The notes: generated by a model from the letters alone, not told the origin. Positions 3,926 through 54,199 are shown, counted from the stretch's first letter. The stretch is DNA of 64,000 nucleotides from IMGVR_UViG_3300025364_000003:62001-126000; one strand, 5' to 3'. Program-made: numbers and translations.

Positions 3926-3951
3926 CCTCTTTGTCTGGATACCCCTTCATA

Positions 3952-3982
3952 TATTTCGTACGACTCGTATTTCGTACGACTC
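3952..3982. repeat. Tandem 2 x 16 nt TATTTCGTACGACTC(G) (TCGTACGA palindrome)
   Basis: Exact tandem copies upstream of the 3995 gene. Confidence 0.9.
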
Positions 3983-4622: not shown

Positions 4623-4827
4623 TTCTTCAGTTGAATCATTGCTCATAAAAGAAGTTCATTATGATCCTTTTATGAGTGTAATGACACTTACATTTTCCAA
4701 TGGTGGAATCTACGAGTACATCGAAGTCCCTGAGGAAACTTACAAGGAACTTACGGAAGCCCCTTCAGCTGGAAAGTATTTCCACATGAACATCAAGAAC
4801 AAGTTCCAGTTTCTTAGAAGAAAGTGA
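4600..4827 (+). CDS. KTSC-domain protein
   Basis: SS..I.EVHYD...L.F.NGGIYEY..VP...Y..L..APSAGKYF..NIK pattern. Confidence 0.9.
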   Translation: MNAKPEVSSSVESLLIKEVHYDPFMSVMTLTFSNGGIYEYIEVPEETYKELTEAPSAGKYFHMNIKNKFQFLRRK

Positions 4828-15545: not shown

Positions 15546-15666
15546 TTGATTTAGGCTCCTACCCGGCATTGCAGCACGAACCAAGTCGACATTGGTTCTC
15601 GGGATCTTCTGTGAGCAATTTCCCAATGGGAACACAGATGTTCTCTGCTTGAACTATAAGAGCTAG

Positions 15667-15739
15667 TGACCCCAACGGGATTCGAACCCGTATTAACAGC
15701 GTGAAAGGCTGCTGTCCTGAACCGTTAGACGATGGGGCC
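15667..15739 (-). tRNA. trnE: tRNA-Glu(UUC)
   Basis: GGCCCCA/TGGGGTC acceptor stem, GCAGC-CTTTCAC-GCTGT anticodon arm, GGTTCGAATCC T-arm; followed by CTA, not CCA. Confidence 0.95.
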
Positions 15740-15902
15740 AAGCGTGTAGAAGTTGCGACCCACAGAGTCTACACCCTCTGTGCATGTCCAGCAGTGTCGG
15801 TGGTGGCCATTTGTAGTGCGGGCCTGTTAGGAGGCAACCGCCGGGGGACATTATTAGTTTAGCAGGAATTAGCTTGAATATGAACCCCATTGGGGAATTT
15901 AG

Positions 15903-16301
15903 TTATTCTCGGTTGTCTTTACAGCGATGACAATCATCACAAAGGGGTTGAATGTTGTCAACAGTGTTGGAACCGCCATCACTCATCGAGTGGATGTGAT
16001 CAAGTTGTAAATTGAGATCAAATGTTCTGCAATAGCTGCATTTATGCTTGTAATCAAGCAAAATCTGGGCCCAGGCCCGAGATTGCAGTCTGCCAGGCAG
16101 TTTTCTCTTTTTTGCTCGTCTGTTGTGCCGATGAGTTCTTCGTTGGCTGTCAGCAAAACAATCGTAACAAATTTTGTATTGTCGTTTGTTTGCGACGCAT
16201 TGCTGATCAATGGTATGTCCTCTGTTTTGTTTTAGGCAACAAAGCGCACAGTGCACCTTTGTCGTGTTGAGCACAACAATGGGAGGAGCTGACAGTGACA
16301 T
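15903..16301 (-). CDS. HNH endonuclease with N-terminal Cys motif, inside the tRNA cluster
   Basis: CSYC...LDHIHSMSDGGSNTVDNIQPLCDDCH. Confidence 0.9.
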   Translation of the reverse strand: MSLSAPPIVVLNTTKVHCALCCLKQNRGHTIDQQCVANKRQYKICYDCFADSQRRTHRHNRRAKKRKLPGRLQSRAWAQILLDYKHKCSYCRTFDLNLQLDHIHSMSDGGSNTVDNIQPLCDDCHRCKDNRE

Positions 16302-16335
16302 AACTTTATCAATTTACTGTAAAATGCTTCGCTTA

Positions 16336-16419
16336 TAGGGCCGGTGGGACTCGAACCCACAAGGGCTTGCGCCCGAGAGATTTTAAGTCTCCTCTGTATG
16401 CCAATTCCAGCACGGCCCC
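16336..16419 (-). tRNA. trnL: tRNA-Leu(UAA)
   Basis: Anticodon loop CTTAAAA, long variable arm GGGCGCAAGCCC, GGTTCGAGTCC T-arm; no encoded CCA. Confidence 0.95.
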
Positions 16420-16502
16420 GTGAAATGTTTAACTATAGGTCACCCAAAGTCCCTGCATCCACTTTGAAAAAATGGTGACTAAAATCTTACTCATATCATT
16501 GA

Positions 16503-16575
16503 TGGGTCCAGAGGGAATCGAACCCCCAACCGTCGGGTTAAAAGCCCGCTGCTCTGCCGATTGAGCTATGGACCC
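16503..16575 (-). tRNA. trnK: tRNA-Lys(UUU)
   Basis: GGGTCCA/TGGACCC acceptor stem, loop CTTTTAA, GGTTCGATTCC T-arm; no encoded CCA. Confidence 0.95.
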
Positions 16576-16659
16576 AATACCAGGTTCTCCCACCATTGGG
16601 ACATTGCCTGGCTAGAACATCTCTATGTTAGCATGCCCGAGCCCAAGTTTGAACCGATT

Positions 16660-26533: not shown

Positions 26534-26815
26534 ATGACCTGGTACAGCAGCAAGCGAGCGACGACGGTTCTGGACGACGGTGAGGGGATGGAAGCGTGCG
26601 TCTACCACCGAACGAAGGTGGTCCGGTGGGGCCGAGGAACGGTGACGCTCAACTCTGGTGGACACGAGACGTACACCACCAAGAAGCGCATGAACGAGGT
26701 CTCTGAGGAGTACCGCCTGGGCTTCCGGGTCTTCCAGAAGGACCACCAGTGGTTCGTCAAGCTCCCCACGGGTTCGGTGGTGGAGTTCCGGGATGGGATG
26801 ACCTTTTCCTACTGA
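26534..26815 (+). CDS. Conserved-type phage hypothetical protein
   Basis: YH.T.VV...TLNSGG..T.TTK.RMN...FQKD..WFV motif; promoter and SD. Confidence 0.75.
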   Translation: MTWYSSKRATTVLDDGEGMEACVYHRTKVVRWGRGTVTLNSGGHETYTTKKRMNEVSEEYRLGFRVFQKDHQWFVKLPTGSVVEFRDGMTFSY

Positions 26816-26872
26816 CCCGAAAAAAAGAAAAAGGCGGTTCAGAAAATAACCGCCCCATGCTATAACAAGAAC

Positions 26873-27184
26873 ATAGGCAAGAGGCTAACCCAAGGAAGGC
26901 AGGGCCGCACCATTGGACAAGTGACACCTAGCTAGCTTCGTTGTTCTCGTCGAGCTAGTATTAGGACACCCGAGAGGGCCAGTAAAACAAGCCCCCATAA
27001 GTTACCTACCCCATTAGGGATGGCAGGGGGTGCAAGCGAGGACTCGGGGAGAGCCAAATGGCCTCGGCTCTCCCTTAAAGGAACCGGCCAAAGGTTATGG
27101 GTCTAAGTGCTAGGTAAAAGACCTGAGGCGGTGGGACGTTGAACGTCCCCGGAGAGCACTCAAGCTAGGGTCTGCCCAGTCTAC
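26873..27184 (+). ncRNA. Candidate ~310-nt structured ncRNA co-transcribed ahead of tRNA-Ala
   Basis: Promoter GG-TTCAGA-17-TATAAC but no ORF; 5'/3' end pairing and several strong internal stems. Confidence 0.6.
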
Positions 27185-27257
27185 GGGGTCGTAGCTCAAT
27201 TGGGAGAGCACCTGTTTTGCACGCAGGGGGTTGAGGGTTCAAGTCCCTCCGATTCCA
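27185..27257 (+). tRNA. trnA: tRNA-Ala(UGC)
   Basis: GGGGTCG/CGATTCC acceptor stem with G3:U70, loop TTTGCAC, GGTTCAAGTCC T-arm; no encoded CCA. Confidence 0.95.
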
Positions 27258-27401
27258 TTTAAGATGAACCTCAAAAAATTGATAATCGGTTCATAATCCT
27301 GACCAAGTCTGTGATTCTTAGAATCATGGAGGTTGAGGCTAGCTCCTAAAAAGCCTCCCAACAACCAACCAAGTTCACAGAGAAACCAAAGGAAACAAAT
27401 C

Positions 27402-27878
27402 ATGCCCAAGCTCACTTCCACCGGTCGCAAGCCCGCTCTCGATCTCACCGGCGTCGAGTCCCTTCTCGGTCGCTACTTCTCGGAGGACCAGCCCGGCGTC
27501 GAGGCCCTCGCCAGCGAGTTCGAGATCACCCCGGCCACCGTCCGCAAGTACCTCAAGCTCGCCCTCGGCAGCCTTCCCCGTGGCCGTGCGGCCCTGCTCC
27601 CCCGTGAGCCCCGCAACGTCAAGGTGCTCATGAACGGCATCTCGACCGAGGATCTTCTCGGTGCCGGCCGGGTCGAGCTTCTCCTGCGTCACCGTGAGGC
27701 CGGCGTCAGCCTGACCGCCCTCGCCAGCGAGTTCGGGATCAGTCGTGACCGGGTGACCAAGCTCGTCCGGGCCCACGAGCCGGAGAGCGAGCCGGAGGTC
27801 GCCGAGGCGTCGCCGGAGCCGGAGAGCGTCCAGGTGCCCGATTCGGAGCCGGTCTGCCTCGACGAGGCGGTGGCCTGA
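27402..27878 (+). CDS. Tandem-HTH protein with sigma4-like C-terminal HTH and acidic tail (paralog 2)
   Basis: STGRKPALDLTG, ATVRKYLK, LPRGRAAL.PRE, LLG.GRVELL, LTALASEFGISRDRV shared with 8215..8748. Confidence 0.8.
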   Translation: MPKLTSTGRKPALDLTGVESLLGRYFSEDQPGVEALASEFEITPATVRKYLKLALGSLPRGRAALLPREPRNVKVLMNGISTEDLLGAGRVELLLRHREAGVSLTALASEFGISRDRVTKLVRAHEPESEPEVAEASPEPESVQVPDSEPVCLDEAVA

Positions 27879-28605: not shown

Positions 28606-29796
28606 ATGACGACGTTGGTACAGAAGTTCCTCCGTGAGCGCTCGCTGGCCGAGCTTGAGGCCGAGCACGGTGTCAAGGCTCGTGTGGCCGGGCACAAGTT
28701 CTCGCTCAACTACGATCAGATCGAGGCAAAGGACAGCGATCCGCTGGCACAGGAGTGCCGTGGCTTGATCCTGACGCCCGTTCAGGGTTCGATCGTGACG
28801 GAGGCTCCGCTTGGAGAGACCCGAATTCTGGCCCGTCCGTTCAACCGTTTCTTTAATCTGGGCCAGGAGGCTGCTGCCCCGGTCGACCTCGATCACCCGG
28901 AGACTTGTTTCTACGAGAAGATGGATGGAACGTTGACGATCCTCTACTTCGACGATGTTGTGGAGAAGTGGCATGTTGCCACCCGTGGGGTGCCGGAGGC
29001 CGATCTCCCGATCGATGGTTTCGGGCAGTACACCTTTCGGACGCTTTTCGAGCACGCCTGCCGTGATACCACTGGTCGTGACTTCAAGGATTTCGTTCGT
29101 TACTTGGATGTGCAGAGCACGTACATCTTCGAGCTGACGACGCCGATGAACCGTATCGTGGTTGATTATCAGGATTACAAGATCACCCTGTTGGGTGCTC
29201 GTGCCCGAGAGACCGGGGTGGAGTTTGATCCGGTGGACCTGGCACCGGTGCTTGAGGTGCCTCACGCTCCGGTGTACCGATTCGGCTCGTTGCAGGCAAT
29301 GGTGGATTTTGTGTCATCCCGTAACCCCCAGGACCACGAGGGCATCGTGGTTTGTGACCCCTCGTATCGTCGAATCAAGGTCAAGAACGCTGGCTATCTT
29401 GCCTTGAACAAGGTTCGGGACAGTGTGCTCAGTTCGCCCCGTGGGCTCGTGGAGTTGCTTCTTTTGGAGAAGCTCGACGATGCTCTGCCTCTGTTTCCTG
29501 ACCACGTTGTGGAGTGAGCTGAGAAGCTCCGAGATGCCTTCCGTGTACTGGTTCAGGATTTCCGCAAGGATTACCTAATCTGCCAAGAGGAGGCCGATCG
29601 GGGTTCCCCGGATGCACACCGCAAGTCTTTCGCTCTGGCGGTGCAGGCTCGGAAGCTTTGGATGGCTCCAATGATGGACGTGTACCAGGGCAAGGCTGAC
29701 GATCTTGTGAGCTGGATCAAGAGCCGGCGCCAGGTCGACGGTGGTTGGCCTAACAGCTTCTTGGATCAGGTTCTCCGGCAGCTAGAAAGCAAGTGA
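28606..29796 (+). pseudogene. T4 Rnl1-like RNA ligase interrupted by an in-frame TGA at 29515-29517
   Basis: ECRGL, FNRFFN, motif I YEKMDG, FEL, EGIVV, KVKN..Y; frame stays open 92 codons after the TGA to TGA 29794-29796. Confidence 0.8.
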
Positions 29797-50163: not shown

Positions 50164-50985
50164 ATGGCACGCAACGAATCATTCTTTCAAAGACTAATCG
50201 AAAGTCATGCTCTTATTCCCCTGGTGCGCAAAGCTCACATGGGCAAGTCTGGGATTTATTTAATTCACAATGTAAGAACTGACCGGTTTTATGTTGGAAG
50301 TGCTACCAACCTCTATACTAGAAAAAATGTTCACCTGACTCAACTAAGAAAAAATAAGCATCACAATATCTTCCTTCAAAGAGATTTTAATAAGACTAAC
50401 GGTGAAATCAAATTTTTTGTATTACATTCAACAGAGAAATCATTACTGATTTCCAAGGAACAAGAAATTTTAGACAAGGTTTTTGGAAAGTCAGATTGTT
50501 ATAACCTAAATCCAATTGCCAATAGCTGGTTGGGTCGAAATCACAATGAAAAAACCAAAAATTTGTTGTCAGTTATAGCACTCAAAAGAAAAATTTCAAA
50601 TAAAACTCGTAAAAAAATGAGCGAATCTAAAAAGGGAATTCCGCTTCCTGAAAACCACTCAATCAGAAACGGCCACAGCGAAAAAACGAAAGAAAAAATC
50701 AGAAATTCGATGATTGGTCAGAAAAATCACTTTTTTGGCAAGACGCATTCAAAAAAAACAAAGAAAAAAATCAGTGAAAGTCTAAAGGGAAAATATTTTG
50801 GTCCCAAAAGCAAAATAAAGGCAACAAACATTATTTCTAGTGAAGTGTTATATTATGAAAGCATGGCCGAAGCTGCCAGAGATTTGAAATTAAACCAAGG
50901 GCATATTAGCAGTGTCTGCTCAGATAAATTTCAACAAACGGGGGGCTGGAAATTTGTAAAGGTGGAAAACAATGGCTCGGAATGA
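50164..50985 (+). CDS. Free-standing GIY-YIG homing endonuclease with NUMOD3-like repeats; begins with the portal's first 11 residues
   Basis: SGIYLI...FYVGSA..R, HHN..LQ.DF, HSEKTKEKI and HSKKTKKKIS repeats, C-terminal YESMAEAARDL HTH. Confidence 0.92.
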   Translation: MARNESFFQRLIESHALIPLVRKAHMGKSGIYLIHNVRTDRFYVGSATNLYTRKNVHLTQLRKNKHHNIFLQRDFNKTNGEIKFFVLHSTEKSLLISKEQEILDKVFGKSDCYNLNPIANSWLGRNHNEKTKNLLSVIALKRKISNKTRKKMSESKKGIPLPENHSIRNGHSEKTKEKIRNSMIGQKNHFFGKTHSKKTKKKISESLKGKYFGPKSKIKATNIISSEVLYYESMAEAARDLKLNQGHISSVCSDKFQQTGGWKFVKVENNGSE

Positions 50986-53900
50986 AAGTTTTTTCCAGCG
51001 TCTGACGAGGCTCTTTAGATCTGGCCCTGCAATTCAGCGTAGGATCAAAGGCCAGAATGTAGCTTCGTACTATGATACAAAGCTCATTCAGGGCAATTAT
51101 GGATATCGTGCCCCTGCACCATTCGGCTTTGGCCGAGAAAATTCTCCATTTTCCGTGCTTGGTTCATACGGAATGCTCGATCGTATGGCTCGTTATGCTG
51201 AGTTTGCTGAGATGGAGTATTGCCTTCATGGGGATACAAAAATTGCAGTTCCTGGTGGATACAAAACCATCAAAGAGTTAGCTGAGCAGCATGGCCTTGA
51301 TGGTGAGTTTATTGTTTACTCTTGGGACCACTCAAAAGAAAAAATCGTTCCAGCAGTTGGACGACAGGCACGGCAGACACGAACAGATCATGCGTTTAAA
51401 GTCACATTCGACTCAGGCAAAGAAATTATTGGAACAAGTAATCATCGCCTAATGAAGCGAGATGGTACCTATTGTGAAATTGGTGATCTGAAGCCTGGCG
51501 ATGCTATGATGCCATTCTACAGACGTTCTGTTGCCTCAGATAGAACTGAAGGTCAGGAAAACCTATACCAAACAATCTATACGGTCAACAGAGAAGAAAA
51601 TCCATATGGATGGACAGCTGAACATAAGTTGCTGGCCGAGTTTATTCTTGGTCGGTCATTGACTGAGGATGAGGTTGTTCATCATAAGAATTTCAAGGTA
51701 CACGATAATAGGATTGAGAATCTTGAAGTCATGAGCGCAGAGGATCATCGTCGTTTGCATGCTGAAATTCTCAATGGTAAAAAATGGGATTACAAAACCA
51801 ATTCTGAATGGATTGAAAACTTCAAGAGACAACATAGTACATGGATGAAAGCTAACAATCCTGCGGAGCGTAAAGACATCACGTTCGAACGTATCCTTTA
51901 CTGGTGTGACACAAACAGTTTCAACCTATACAAGGTTGCACGTGCATTTGACACAGACACCAATACCATCAAGCGAAAGTTGGCCTCAAAGGGTTTCACA
52001 TCCTGGATTGATTTTGCAACGGCATATTCTCCTGGCTGGAGAAGTGAAAGCTGGATCAACGCAGGAAAGCAGAACCCGAGATACCGATCCGATGTGTCTT
52101 TTGGTAAGATTTGTGACGTGTACAAGCAAGGTATGACCAAAAAGGCGATTGCAGAAGCGCTTGGAGTTTCCGTAGTGCCAATTCAAAATCGCTTGAAGGA
52201 GGCAGGTTACCAAACTTGGACTGAATTTGTGTCAAGTTATGAAAACCACAAGGTGGTTTCGGTTGAATACTACGGAGAAATTCCCTTATATGACCTTACG
52301 GTTGATGGGTATAAGAATTTCGCAACTGACAGTGTCATCTCACACAACACTCCTGAGATTGCAACAGCATTGGACATTTATGCTGACGAATCTGTGGGAG
52401 GCGATGAACACGGACATTCTTTCCATGTGTTTTCAGACAACGTTCAGATCAAACGAGCTTTAGAAGAGCTTTTCTATGATGTTCTGAACGTAGAATTCAA
52501 CATCCGAGTTTGGGCAAGGAATCTTGTCAAATATGGAGATTTTTTCCTTTATAATGAAGTTCTGCCAGACATTGGCGTGATCAATGCACAGCCGATTCCA
52601 GTAAACGATATTGAACGTGAAGAAGGTTTCGACGAAGAGGACCCATATGCAATTCGCTTCAAGTGGCTTACTAGAGGAAACGTTTATTTGGAAAACTGGC
52701 AGGTTACACACTTCAGAATCTTGGGCAATGACTTGTTCTTGCCTTATGGTACCGCCGTTTTAGAACCAGCACGAAGAATATGGCGTCAGCTCATCATGAT
52801 GGAAGATGCCATGTTGGTCTATCGAGTTGTCCGTTCACCTGAGCGTCGAGTTTTCTACATTGATGTTGGGAATGTAGCGCCAAACGATGTTCCTTCTTAC
52901 ATGGAAGCAGCAAAACAAACGCTACGTTCTCATTCTGTCATTGATAGAACATCAGGTCGTCAGGACTTGCGTTATAACCCACTTGCAATCGACGAGGATT
53001 ATTATATCCCCGTTCGAGGCAACCAGTCAGGTACTAAAATTGAAACATTGGCAGGTGGCCAGCATGTTACTGCTACGGAAGACGTTCAATATATTCAAAG
53101 CAAACTATTCGCAGCACTCAAAGTTCCCAAACCTTACTTGAACTATGATGAAAACCTTTCCTCTAAGGCGACACTTGCACAGACTGATGTACGATTTAGC
53201 CGTACCATTTCTGCAATTCAGAAGATTATTATTGCAGAAATGTCAAAACTTGCAATGATTCACCTTTATGCCAAGGGGTTTGATGGAGAAGATTTAATCA
53301 ACTTTGAATTGAAGCTCAGTAATCCTTCTACAGTGGCACTCCAGCAGAAACTGGAACTTTGGGCAACTAAGATGGACGTTGCAGGAACAGCTAAAGAAAC
53401 TAAACTGGTTGATGAGCGTTGGATTCAGAAGGTATTGCTTGAACTAACGGACGACGACATTAATAAAATCAATAAAGGACTTTACGAGGATAAGATTCGT
53501 GAAGTGCAACTTGACCAAGTTGCATTTGAAGAAGAGGTCTTTAAACCAACCACAACGGATGAATTCTCACCAGCTGGTTATGGCATTCCAGGAGAGAATA
53601 TTCCGAAGGGAGAAGTGCCATCCCCGCCACCTAGAGGCGGAAGTGAAATTGTCGGTCCGCCACCAAAGAAGAATCCATATAAGCTTGATTACAAACAAGG
53701 AACAACTCCGATTAAAGCTACGCCATTCTTGACGAGAAATCGAAAAAATAGAAAGAGAAGGGTTGGTGCTGGTGGGAGATCCAATACTGCAAACCCGGAC
53801 TTTGGCGCAATGCTTCATCCAGGTAAGAACAGATCCCTAAGTGACATTTATGGTCGTCAATCTCGCATGGAGGGAATTGAAATTGATGGTGAGGAATTCG

Positions 53901-54199
53901 TATTTGGTGAAAGCAACGACTTTAAGCCAGAACCAGTTTTACCTGGCGAACTTAAGAGTATCTTTAGAAGGATGACAGAACATTTTCAAAAAAACCAACA
54001 AAAGAGGACAAAAATTATTACTGAAGAACTTGAAACTGATATCATCGAAGAAACCGACGAAGACCAAAAACTTATTGAAGAAGTGTTATCAAATGGTGAG
54101 GATATGGAAATTAAGTCATCCTCATTAAAGGAAACATTTAGCCTAGAATCAGATGAAGAAGTTGACATAGAAGATATTATTGAAATCGACTTAGAATAA
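50972..54199 (+). CDS. Portal protein (T4 gp20-like) containing an intein
   Basis: PEIATALDIYADES, R.LVKYGD.F, FLPYGT.VLEPAR..WRQL..MEDAM.VYR..R.PERRVFYIDVGN, DEDYYIP, I.TL.GG, KLF.ALKVP motifs. Confidence 0.93.
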   Translation: MARNESFFQRLTRLFRSGPAIQRRIKGQNVASYYDTKLIQGNYGYRAPAPFGFGRENSPFSVLGSYGMLDRMARYAEFAEMEYCLHGDTKIAVPGGYKTIKELAEQHGLDGEFIVYSWDHSKEKIVPAVGRQARQTRTDHAFKVTFDSGKEIIGTSNHRLMKRDGTYCEIGDLKPGDAMMPFYRRSVASDRTEGQENLYQTIYTVNREENPYGWTAEHKLLAEFILGRSLTEDEVVHHKNFKVHDNRIENLEVMSAEDHRRLHAEILNGKKWDYKTNSEWIENFKRQHSTWMKANNPAERKDITFERILYWCDTNSFNLYKVARAFDTDTNTIKRKLASKGFTSWIDFATAYSPGWRSESWINAGKQNPRYRSDVSFGKICDVYKQGMTKKAIAEALGVSVVPIQNRLKEAGYQTWTEFVSSYENHKVVSVEYYGEIPLYDLTVDGYKNFATDSVISHNTPEIATALDIYADESVGGDEHGHSFHVFSDNVQIKRALEELFYDVLNVEFNIRVWARNLVKYGDFFLYNEVLPDIGVINAQPIPVNDIEREEGFDEEDPYAIRFKWLTRGNVYLENWQVTHFRILGNDLFLPYGTAVLEPARRIWRQLIMMEDAMLVYRVVRSPERRVFYIDVGNVAPNDVPSYMEAAKQTLRSHSVIDRTSGRQDLRYNPLAIDEDYYIPVRGNQSGTKIETLAGGQHVTATEDVQYIQSKLFAALKVPKPYLNYDENLSSKATLAQTDVRFSRTISAIQKIIIAEMSKLAMIHLYAKGFDGEDLINFELKLSNPSTVALQQKLELWATKMDVAGTAKETKLVDERWIQKVLLELTDDDINKINKGLYEDKIREVQLDQVAFEEEVFKPTTTDEFSPAGYGIPGENIPKGEVPSPPPRGGSEIVGPPPKKNPYKLDYKQGTTPIKATPFLTRNRKNRKRRVGAGGRSNTANPDFGAMLHPGKNRSLSDIYGRQSRMEGIEIDGEEFVFGESNDFKPEPVLPGELKSIFRRMTEHFQKNQQKRTKIITEELETDIIEETDEDQKLIEEVLSNGEDMEIKSSSLKETFSLESDEEVDIEDIIEIDLE
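51221..52348 (+). mobile_element. Intein (376 aa) with HNH endonuclease and two HTH repeats
   Basis: Starts CLHGDT, block B T..H, EHKL...VVHHKN..HDNRIENL HNH, ends YDLTV..YKNFA...SHN followed by Thr+1. Confidence 0.93.

What the first reader, a model, noticed from the sequence alone, without database searches (positions are those of the whole stretch)
26873..27184. Promoter-driven ~310-nt structured non-coding RNA directly ahead of tRNA-Ala
Seen: a full phage promoter (GG-TTCAGA-17-TATAAC-6-A) with no ORF behind it. The ends can pair (TAGGC 26874-78 with GTCTA 27179-83; GGC..ACCC with GGGT..GCC) and close one nt before tRNA-Ala. Internal stems include GGGAGAGCC/GGCTCTCCC (27047/27066), GGGACG/CGTCCC (27133/27144), GGTCT/AGACC (27100/27119) and CCCCC/GGGGG. 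I see no RNase P (GAGGAAAGUCC), tmRNA or group I hallmarks. Known: large phage ncRNAs such as GOLLD and ROOL often sit beside tRNAs but are longer. Inference: possibly an uncatalogued RNA class released by RNase P cleavage at the tRNA.
Basis: partly seen in the sequence, partly recalled or inferred. Interest (0 to 1): 0.7.

Follow-up and report, generated by a model that had tools for sequence, protein, structure and literature searches.

The report
New pseudoknotted phage RNA beside tRNA-Ala

Summary
The window comes from a giant T4-like phage (about 461 kb) in a hypersaline-lake metagenome. At 26838-26866 there is an extended -10 promoter of a type that recurs across a GC-rich part of this genome. 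No conserved ORF follows it.

Homologues on seven further groups of uncultured-phage contigs share the promoter and a core of about 200 nt (window 26885-27082). The core has three covarying hairpins (H1, H3, H4), an optional GNRA hairpin (H2) and an 8-bp pseudoknot (26943-50 with 27036-43). Of 42 nested pairs, 14 show compensatory changes against 5.7±1.5 in shuffles. The pseudoknot pairs in 64 of 64 cells. G-U pairs outnumber A-C by 54 to 1, which puts the RNA on the + strand.

Rfam 15, ARAGORN and blastn against 50,697 phage records find nothing except tRNAs.

A 96% relative carries an 87-nt insertion inside that helix. Abutting a tRNA is a feature of this lineage only: other members are followed by another tRNA unit, a small ORF, or directly by the next promoter.

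Most likely this is an early-expressed, stable, trans-acting RNA cut from a longer transcript. That function is inferred, not shown.

The parts
26534..26815 (+). Upstream gene for a 93-aa Kyano_Gp96-family protein. It served as the syntenic anchor for finding homologues.
   Evidence: Pfam PF23790, E 2.4e-13. Homologues at 65-73% identity lie upstream of the same RNA.
26820..26832 (+). A-rich tract upstream of the -35, resembling an UP element.
   Evidence: Present before the RNA promoter in most homologues and before many promoters of this type in the genome. Reading it as an UP element is inference.
26833..26854 (+). Hairpin GGCGG-12-CCGCC that encloses the -35. On the minus strand it reads as stem plus T-run, the shape of an intrinsic terminator.
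   Evidence: Flagged by the terminator scan on the minus strand. The arms covary among homologues: GGCGG/CCGCC, GGGG/CCCC, GGTGC/GCACC. Its role is unexplained.
26838..26866 (+). Promoter: -35 TTCAGA (26838-43), TG (26858-59), -10 TATAAC (26861-66). The inferred start is near 26873.
   Evidence: Exact pattern match. The -35 and the TGnTAnnnT motif are conserved in homologues. The same promoter type recurs 31 times against 4-16 in shuffles (mean about 9). The start site is inferred from spacing.
26885..27082 (+). Conserved core of the new structured RNA family, about 198 nt here.
   Evidence: nhmmer and CM matches in 7 other contig groups at 149-233 and 177-238 bits. There is a single copy in the phage's own record at 178 bits. 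Of 313 cells, 96.8% are paired, and 14 pairs show compensatory change.
26927..26965 (+). H1: long hairpin (26927-40 with 26951-65) containing an invariant G-U pair and a 2-nt bulge. Its apical loop carries the 5' strand of the pseudoknot.
   Evidence: Five pairs show changes on both sides. The relative's A26963G change turns a U-A pair into U-G.
26943..26950 (+). Pseudoknot 5' strand GUUCUCGU, in the H1 loop.
   Evidence: Pairs with 27036-43 in 64 of 64 cells. There are two compensatory pairs across three haplotypes. Only 2 of 2000 shuffles reach the observed score, and slid controls pair in 31-63% of cells.
26969..26978 (+). H2: CCC-GAGA-GGG hairpin with a GNRA loop. It is optional in the family.
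   Evidence: Absent in L032 and L048. Replaced by GCUC-UUA-GAGC in L036.
26991..27031 (+). H3: GCCCCC with GGGGGU, a conserved internal loop AUAAGUYA, and a variable distal stem.
   Evidence: Two basal pairs show compensatory change. Six of the relative's 12 substitutions fall in the distal stem. The distal part is deleted in L036.
27036..27043 (+). Pseudoknot 3' strand GCGAGGAC, between H3 and H4.
27046..27075 (+). H4: GGGGAGAGCC with GGCUCUCCCU. Most homologues carry a longer branched extension here.
   Evidence: All basal pairs are formed, and three of them show compensatory change. The distal hairpin of the homologues has four covarying pairs.
27076..27081 (+). Conserved single-stranded 3' motif UAAAGG, which ends the conserved RNA.
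   Evidence: The columns CTTAAA are invariant in the alignment. Similarity stops after it.
27083..27184 (+). Lineage-specific tail, acting as a leader for tRNA-Ala.
   Evidence: No homologue aligns here. It is kept only in the 96% relative, with 4 substitutions that include a G-C to G-U change, and that relative has an 87-nt insertion at 27181.
27185..27257 (+). tRNA-Ala (anticodon UGC).
   Evidence: ARAGORN and Rfam, 65.8 bits.
27288..27318 (+). Second promoter of the same type (GGTTCA-16-TGTGATTCT), serving the HTH gene.
   Evidence: The same motif precedes the HTH gene in L037, L048 and L039. In the relative, T27312A and G27313T bring the -10 closer to the consensus. That it works as a promoter is inferred.
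27402..27878 (+). Downstream gene for a 158-aa protein with two helix-turn-helix motifs. It is the syntenic partner of the RNA.
   Evidence: Pfam HTH_11, HTH_28 and HTH_7 hits. Orthologues at 64-73% identity in L037, L048 and L058.

Best explanation
The locus is a stand-alone gene for a new structured RNA of about 200 nt (window about 26873/26885 to 27082). It is carried by a narrow lineage of uncultured T4-like phages.

**How it is made.** A strong sigma-70-type promoter, with an A tract, a -35 and a TG-extended -10, drives it. This promoter type is used throughout this early-gene-like block of the genome.

**How it folds.** The RNA forms four hairpins. An 8-bp pseudoknot joins the apical loop of H1 to the segment between H3 and H4. 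This leaves nearly invariant purine-rich junctions exposed: AUGGAYUAG, AAACAAG, the AUAAGUCA internal loop and the 3' UAAAGG.

**How its ends arise.** The family has no terminator of its own, so transcription runs on into whatever follows. In this phage that is a 100-nt tail and tRNA-Ala. RNase P would therefore cut at 27184/27185, and a further cut near the UAAAGG/A-rich boundary would free the core.

**What it does.** Most likely it acts in trans as a stable RNA that binds a protein or RNA partner through its conserved junctions, in the manner of the stable RNAs of the T4 tRNA region.

**Shown:** conservation, structure, strand, promoter conservation and the absence of any catalogued relative.
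**Inferred:** transcription, processing sites, stability and trans action.
For: **Homologues.** They were found through synteny. nhmmer scores are 149-233 bits and CM scores 177-238 bits.

**Covariation.**
- 96.8% of cells are paired.
- 14 of 42 pairs show changes on both sides, against 5.7±1.5 in shuffles (0 of 500 reach the observed value). Slid controls give at most 3. RNAalifold agrees.
- The pseudoknot pairs in 64 of 64 cells, with two compensatory pairs; 2 of 2000 shuffles reach it.

**Strand.** G-U 54 against A-C 1.

**Not coding.** There is no shared ORF; the longest open stretches fall on different strands and frames.

**Promoter.** It is conserved in five lineages and recurs in the genome.

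**Against cis regulation.**
- The next unit always has its own promoter.
- The interval after the core is an insertion hot spot holding a tail plus tRNA-Ala, a small ORF, tRNA-Gln/Pro, or nothing. An HNH-like ORF lies further on in L050.

**Selective constraint.** The core is 57-87% identical between lineages whose flanking intergenic DNA no longer aligns. The 96% relative changes only variable parts or makes structure-compatible changes.
Against: - There is no expression data. No RNA run was listed, so the transcript, its ends and its stability are unobserved.
- Only 8 distinct sequences, all from one narrow clade, so junction conservation may partly reflect shallow divergence.
- In L037 and L048 the RNA would be the 5' part of a read-through mRNA for the HTH gene. 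A cis role is therefore not excluded.
- No partner protein is identified. Both neighbouring genes also occur without the RNA (L054, L056, L058).
- The MFE z-scores are weak: -1.0 for the 312 nt and -1.8 for the core against mononucleotide shuffles.
Confidence: 0.6

Rival explanations
1. The RNA is a cis-acting leader. The folded nascent RNA would modify the transcribing polymerase (processive antitermination or Rho resistance, as with HK022 put RNA or the Bacillus EAR element), or stabilise the transcript. Untranslated tRNA genes and the HTH gene downstream would then be fully transcribed.
For: - It sits directly after a promoter and has no terminator of its own in any lineage.
- In L037 and L048 it is simply the 5' part of a read-through transcript into the HTH gene.
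- In four lineages untranslated tRNA genes follow it.
- In L036, L052 and L050 a hairpin plus U-run lies just before tRNA-Gln, or in L050 before a tRNA-Gln-like sequence that ARAGORN does not call.
Against: - Every downstream unit has its own promoter of the same type, so read-through from the RNA promoter is not needed.
- Spacing to downstream elements is highly variable.
- No similarity to put or EAR families in Rfam.
- At about 200 nt with four helices, it is far larger than known antiterminator RNAs (my own knowledge).
Confidence: 0.15
2. The RNA is a riboswitch-like sensor. The conserved junctions would form a ligand pocket that controls read-through into the downstream genes.
For: Highly conserved junction nucleotides around a pseudoknotted multi-helix core, placed promoter-proximal in a 5' untranslated position.
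Against: - No expression platform exists. There is no terminator or RBS-sequestering helix overlapping the 3' strand of the core.
- What follows the core is the A tract and -35 of the next promoter, or unrelated inserts.
- The downstream genes (tRNAs, an HTH protein) suggest no metabolite.
- No Rfam riboswitch match.
Confidence: 0.07
3. One reading: one RNA of about 312 nt, closed by pairing of its two ends, a GOLLD/ROOL-like large RNA whose 3' end is defined by RNase P at tRNA-Ala.
For: - The end complementarity exists and is used in the MFE fold.
- The RNA abuts the tRNA with no spacer.
- The tail's hairpin at 27133-49 keeps pairing in the 96% relative through a G-C to G-U change.
Against: - The tail (27083-27184), and the 5' segments it would pair with, are not conserved in any homologue.
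- The nearest relative has an 87-nt insertion inside the closing helix.
- Other family members have no adjacent tRNA.
- GOLLD and ROOL models do not match.
Confidence: 0.08
4. The RNA is a strongly reduced RNase P RNA or tmRNA encoded by the phage.
For: - By eye there are short resemblances in this window: AAGGAAGGCAGGGCC resembles the RNase P CR-I motif, and GGCCAAAGG resembles the J5/15 region.
- Portal-related phages do encode a tmRNA beside their tRNAs (L021:289-661).
Against: - RF00010 and all other RNase P and tmRNA models give nothing at the locus, even at E<=10.
- The CR-I-like and J5/15-like strings lie in segments that are not conserved in the family.
- There is no P4-type pairing, no tag ORF and no tRNA-like end.
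- ARAGORN is negative.
Confidence: 0.02

Closest known systems
Phage T4 stable RNAs rnaC (species 1) and rnaD (species 2) in the tRNA gene region
   Same: Non-coding stable RNAs of unknown function, encoded by a T4-type phage in the same transcription region as its tRNA genes and lying directly against a tRNA gene. In T4 the order is tRNA-Arg, rnaD, rnaC (annotation). They would be released by processing rather than by a terminator of their own.
   Different: - No sequence similarity; nhmmer with the family profile finds nothing in the T4 tRNA region.
- The T4 RNAs are 119 and 139 nt and lie after the tRNAs. rnaC ends in a T-arm-like GGTTCGAATCC sequence (read from the sequence).
- This RNA is about 200 nt, pseudoknotted, lies ahead of the tRNA and has its own promoter.
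GOLLD and ROOL large ornate RNAs (Rfam)
   Same: The cryo-EM paper on GOLLD and ROOL turned up in a literature search.
   Different: No match to either model. This RNA is roughly a third or less of their size, with a different architecture. Nothing here bears on multimer formation.
Bacterial RNase P RNA (Rfam RF00010/RF00011)
   Same: A tRNA-associated, pseudoknotted RNA of similar length. RNase P is also the enzyme expected to cut this transcript at the tRNA 5' end.
   Different: No CM match. The family has no conserved CR-I or CR-V motifs and no P4 helix. The pseudoknot here joins a hairpin loop to a downstream junction.
Cis-acting antiterminator RNAs (HK022 put; EAR)
   Same: A promoter-proximal folded RNA with no terminator of its own. 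EAR also has a pseudoknot (my own knowledge).
   Different: No sequence or model similarity. This RNA is much larger, and the downstream units have their own promoters. Function was not tested.

Membership tests
RNase P RNA (bacterial type A/B, archaeal, nuclear) | Match to the Rfam covariance model | tested here: not met
   No hit at gathering score or at E<=10 in 26700-27450. RF00010 searched over the whole record gives only a 5.9-bit hit elsewhere. Nothing in six homologue loci.
RNase P RNA (bacterial type A/B, archaeal, nuclear) | Conserved CR-I and CR-V sequences forming the P4 helix | tested here: not met
   The CR-I-like string at 26893-26907 is not conserved in homologues. No 3' partner lies within the conserved core. 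This judgement was made by eye on alignment A5.
tmRNA | tRNA-Ala-like acceptor and T-arm ends, plus a tag reading frame | tested here: not met
   ARAGORN finds no tmRNA in the window or the record. Three-frame translation shows no tag-like ORF. No Rfam match.
GOLLD / ROOL | Match to the Rfam covariance model | tested here: not met
   No hit.
Group I / group II introns and self-cleaving ribozymes in Rfam | Match to the Rfam covariance model | tested here: not met
   No hit at E<=10 or at E<=1 in homologues.
T4 rnaC / rnaD | Sequence homology to the T4 RNAs | tested here: not met
   nhmmer --max with the family profile against the T4 region 66-76 kb gives only a 3.9-bit hit elsewhere in that region.
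T4 rnaC / rnaD | Stable processed RNA co-transcribed with phage tRNAs | not testable with these tools
   No RNA-seq run was listed. Only the adjacency to tRNA-Ala is shown.
New family defined here (model R1) | H1, H3 and H4 with compensatory changes, plus the pseudoknot from the H1 loop to the H3/H4 junction | tested here: met
   The window scores 178.5 bits against R1, though the window is one of the model's training sequences.
Riboswitch | Expression platform (terminator or RBS-sequestering helix) overlapping the aptamer | tested here: not met
   What follows the core is the next promoter or unrelated inserts. No + strand terminator was found between 26873 and 27906.

The most novel reading that the evidence does not exclude
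The RNA is a new functional class of phage RNA with a complex tertiary fold. It could be a ribozyme, or the RNA subunit or decoy of an RNA-processing or anti-defence activity tied to the phage's tRNA supply-and-repair module. A T4 Rnl1-type RNA ligase lies about 1.4 kb downstream, and tRNA-Lys/Leu/Glu lie about 10 kb upstream. On this reading its invariant junctions and pseudoknot form an active or binding site with no known counterpart.
Probability: 0.2. Interest if true: 0.8.

Novelty: new variant of a known kind. Interest (0 to 1): 0.55.

Why it matters
Giant phages carry many tRNAs and other translation-related genes, but very few of their non-coding RNAs have been defined. This locus offers a clean, testable example. 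It has a promoter, a covariation-supported fold with a pseudoknot, about 60 invariant positions and a working covariance model (R1), and it lies next to tRNA genes.

If it proves to be a stable RNA, it would join T4 rnaC and rnaD, whose functions are still unassigned in the GenBank annotation, as a second, unrelated case of tRNA-region stable RNAs. It could therefore help explain why T4-type phages keep such RNAs.

The result also corrects the unit to study. The target is about 200 nt, not 312, and the tRNA junction is incidental.

Tried and rejected
**Database searches that found nothing**
- Rfam at gathering score and at E<=10 on the locus, and at E<=1 on six homologue loci, gave only tRNAs.
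- RF00010 searched directly over the whole record gave nothing at the locus.
- blastn 'distant' against 50,697 phage records, using the window and two homologues, gave only tRNA hits or none.
- A 17-mer scan of IMG/VR gave one chance hit in a coding region.
- Two-anchor pattern scans of IMG/VR, JGI metagenomes and GTDB genomes found only the same phage plus chance hits in GC-rich genomes.
- A scan of IMG/VR with the HTH-protein alignment found only the same phage.

**Relatives and paralogues**
- Portal-protein relatives (a 320-kb record and others) were searched by blastn and with model R1. They carry no copy.
- No paralogue exists in the phage's own record.

**Identity hypotheses rejected**
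- tmRNA: no tag ORF and no tRNA-like ends.
- RNase P by eye: the similar strings are not conserved in the family.
- A closing helix between the 5' region and downstream sequence in each homologue: no consistent pairing.
- Long-range pairings suggested by a complementarity scan (J1 AUGG with CCAU in H3; UAAG with CUUA): either invariant or explained by local hairpins, so not adopted.
- H2's GNRA loop docking on a CCUAA-type receptor in H4: rejected. Some members have one element without the other, and the motif is not the canonical 11-nt receptor.
- Anti-Shine-Dalgarno mimicry by CCUCCC: rejected because that pair varies (A-U, U-A, U-G, C-G).

**Steps that gave no usable result**
- RNA-seq: no RNA run was listed.
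- Complex prediction of the RNA with the Gp96-like protein was not folded by the tool. It is no evidence either way.
- The protein-atlas look-up of the Gp96-like protein gave its family only, with no function.

Full report
**Setting**

The window is bases 62001-126000 of a 206.5-kb IMG/VR virus record. A near-identical record of about 461 kb exists, and DNA runs that hold the stretch come from hypersaline-lake metagenomes. The phage is T4-like: its portal protein matches the T4 gp20 family and is interrupted by an intein with an HNH domain. The genome is about 40% GC, but window 3000-38000 is a block of 50-57% GC. The finding lies inside that block.

**Checking the observation**

- The string TTCAGA-17-TATAAC is at 26838-26866.
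- tRNA-Ala(UGC) is at 27185-27257.
- No ORF longer than 41 aa lies between them.
That fold is no more stable than shuffles (z = -1.0), so the single sequence gives no statistical support for structure.
- Rfam 15 gives nothing except the tRNA, at gathering score and at E<=10. RF00010 searched directly does not touch the locus. ARAGORN finds no tmRNA.

**Finding relatives**

Direct DNA searches failed. This covers blastn against 50,697 phage records, exact and two-anchor pattern scans of IMG/VR, JGI metagenomes and GTDB genomes, and searches of portal-related giant phages by blastn and by covariance model.

Synteny worked. The upstream 93-aa protein belongs to Pfam Kyano_Gp96. Its homologues at 64-73% identity lie on short Logan contigs. 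In seven distinct contig groups the DNA just downstream of that gene aligns to the finding: L037, L039, L032/33, L034-36, L052, L048/49 and L050/51. The more distant Gp96 contigs L054-L058 lack it. L053 also gave no hit, but its contig ends about 220 nt past the gene, so it says nothing either way.

Laying metagenome contigs on the window also revealed a microbial-mat relative that is about 96% identical. It has 12 substitutions in the 312 nt and an 87-nt insertion between 27180 and 27182.

**What is conserved**

Two things are shared.

1. *The promoter.* It has an A-rich tract, a -35 of GTTCA type, and a TG-extended -10 (CCATGnTAnnnT).
   - The same promoter type sits directly in front of the phage's other tRNA-Ala and in front of the downstream HTH gene here and in L037, L048 and L039.
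   - A regex for it finds 31 sites in the record against 4-16 in shuffles (mean about 9), and 24 of them lie in the GC-rich block.
The simple sigma-70 scan missed it because the -10 ends in C.
2. *A core running from about 26885 to 27082.* It ends in the invariant CTTAAA(G)G motif.

After that motif the sequences are unrelated:
- L037 and L048 go straight into the A tract and -35 of the next promoter.
- L039 has a small Arg-rich ORF.
- L036, L052 and L050 have another promoter, a leader hairpin with a U-run, and then tRNA-Gln. In L050 ARAGORN does not call that tRNA-Gln-like sequence; an HNH-like ORF and tRNA-Arg lie further on.
- This window has a 100-nt tail and tRNA-Ala.

It is a conserved RNA of about 200 nt joined to a tRNA leader specific to this lineage. 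The proposed end-closing helix needs that tail, has no counterpart in other members, and is split by the 87-nt insertion in the closest relative.

**Structure**

RNAalifold on five sequences, and then on eight, predicts three hairpins:
- H1: 26927-40 with 26951-65
- H3: 26991-96 with 27026-31, plus a variable distal stem
- H4: 27046-55 with 27066-75, extended and branched in most members

On the model-fitted alignment:
- 96.8% of 313 cells are standard pairs.
- 14 of 42 pairs carry changes on both sides, against 5.7±1.5 in column shuffles (0 of 500 reach the observed value).
- Controls with partners slid by 1-3 columns give 0-3 such pairs.

A small GNRA hairpin, H2 (26969-78), is present in five members, replaced by a different hairpin in L036, and absent in L032 and L048.

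The apical loop of H1 (GUUCUCGU, 26943-50) is complementary to GCGAGGAC (27036-43), which lies between H3 and H4. Across the eight sequences all 64 cells pair. There are three haplotypes that differ by two compensatory exchanges (C-G/U-A, C-G/C-G and U-A/C-G), plus U-A to U-G transitions. Only 2 of 2000 shuffles reach the observed score, and slid registers pair in only 31-63% of cells. This pseudoknot competes with three weak apical pairs in the RNAalifold model, and I prefer the pseudoknot.

In the supported helices G-U occurs 54 times and A-C once, so the RNA is read from the + strand. No ORF is shared: the longest open stretches fall on different strands and frames.

The close relative's substitutions fit the model:
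- A26963G turns a U-A pair of H1 into U-G.
- Six changes cluster in the variable tip of H3.
- None touches the pseudoknot or H4.

**Identity**

Model R1 (228 positions, 42 pairs) finds a single copy in the phage's own record and none in four portal-related records, including one of 320 kb estimated 81% complete. The RNA therefore belongs to the Gp96-HTH gene module, not to the giant-phage core.

The contigs carrying it are 50-57% GC, like the GC-rich block here. This suggests the block shares ancestry with those phages, which is inference.

No Rfam family matches any member. A by-eye resemblance of 26893-26907 to RNase P CR-I, and of 27086-27100 to J5/15, falls in non-conserved segments and is rejected. 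There is no tag ORF and no tRNA-like terminus.

T4's own tRNA region carries two stable RNAs, rnaD and rnaC, right after tRNA-Arg. The family profile does not match them. They are the closest known analogue by context, not by homology.

**How it most likely works**

*Shown:* a conserved promoter, a conserved pseudoknotted fold, the strand, the lack of a terminator of its own, a variable downstream neighbour, and independent promoters for the downstream units.

*Inferred:*
- The RNA is transcribed early from a host-type promoter.
- The primary transcript runs into the next unit.
- In this phage RNase P cleavage at the tRNA 5' end (27184/27185) trims it. A further endonucleolytic cut near the single-stranded UAAAGG/A-rich boundary would release the core of about 200 nt.
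- The compact fold then displays nearly invariant purine-rich junctions to a partner in trans.

A cis role, either antitermination with transcript stabilisation or ligand sensing, is less likely. Each downstream unit has its own promoter, the spacing is unconstrained, and no expression platform exists. It is not excluded, however, above all for L037 and L048, where the RNA is the 5' part of a read-through HTH mRNA. No RNA-seq data could be found, so transcription itself remains unobserved.

**Verdict**

This is a real feature and a new RNA family, of a kind already known in outline: stable structured RNAs in phage tRNA regions. Interest is moderate to good for RNA biologists. The family is narrow (8 sequences from one clade) and its function is unknown.

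Noticed in passing
window 3000-38000 (genome 65-100 kb): A block of about 35 kb at 50-57% GC sits in a phage of about 40% GC. It is densely set with promoters of the GGTTCA-N16-TGnTAnnnT type on both strands: 24 of 31 regex hits fall here. It carries small ORFs, four tRNAs and an Rnl1-type RNA ligase. The homologous contigs from other samples have the same GC content, which suggests a horizontally shared early-gene module.
   Followed up: partly
window 26833-26854: A hairpin encloses the -35 of the RNA promoter. Its arms covary among homologues, and on the minus strand it reads as a canonical intrinsic terminator (stem plus T-run). Yet all neighbouring genes are on the + strand. Its role is unexplained; it could be an insulator, a processing site or an antisense stop.
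   Followed up: partly
L036:1463-1521, L052 about 4745-4782, L050 about 3930-3975: In relatives, tRNA-Gln (in L050 a tRNA-Gln-like sequence that ARAGORN does not call) is preceded by its own promoter and a conserved Y-shaped leader hairpin containing CGUAAGUCG, ending in a U-run that abuts the tRNA. This has the shape of a terminator or attenuator directly before a tRNA. T4 rnaD and rnaC contain similar GGUAAGUCG and CGUAAGCCG strings.
   Followed up: no
window 50972-54199: The T4-type portal protein gene is interrupted by an intein with an HNH endonuclease domain (Pfam Portal_T4, Intein_splicing, HNH_3).
   Followed up: no
L021:289-661 (record G002, a portal relative): A related giant phage encodes a tmRNA (tag ADDAPFALAA) next to a tRNA cluster. 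The 288 nt upstream of it also appear to be non-coding.
   Followed up: no
genome 42500-42630 (outside the window): A second tRNA-Ala(UGC) lies in the AT-rich part of the genome. It is driven by TTTACA-17-TATAGT and has almost no leader. The two copies differ in sequence.
   Followed up: partly
window 28606-29517 and 15666-16576: A T4 Rnl1-family RNA ligase gene lies 1.4 kb downstream, and tRNA-Lys(UUU)/Leu/Glu lie on the minus strand about 10 kb upstream. The combination resembles the T4 answer to anticodon nucleases.
   Followed up: no
window 27181 in the microbial-mat relative (runs X6, X7): The 96% relative has 87 extra bases between the tail and tRNA-Ala, beginning AAATCGAGCC. Their content could not be fetched.
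   Followed up: no
L050:3975-4493: An HNH-type homing-endonuclease-like ORF is inserted among tRNA genes downstream of the RNA in one relative, much as segB is in the T4 tRNA cluster.
   Followed up: no
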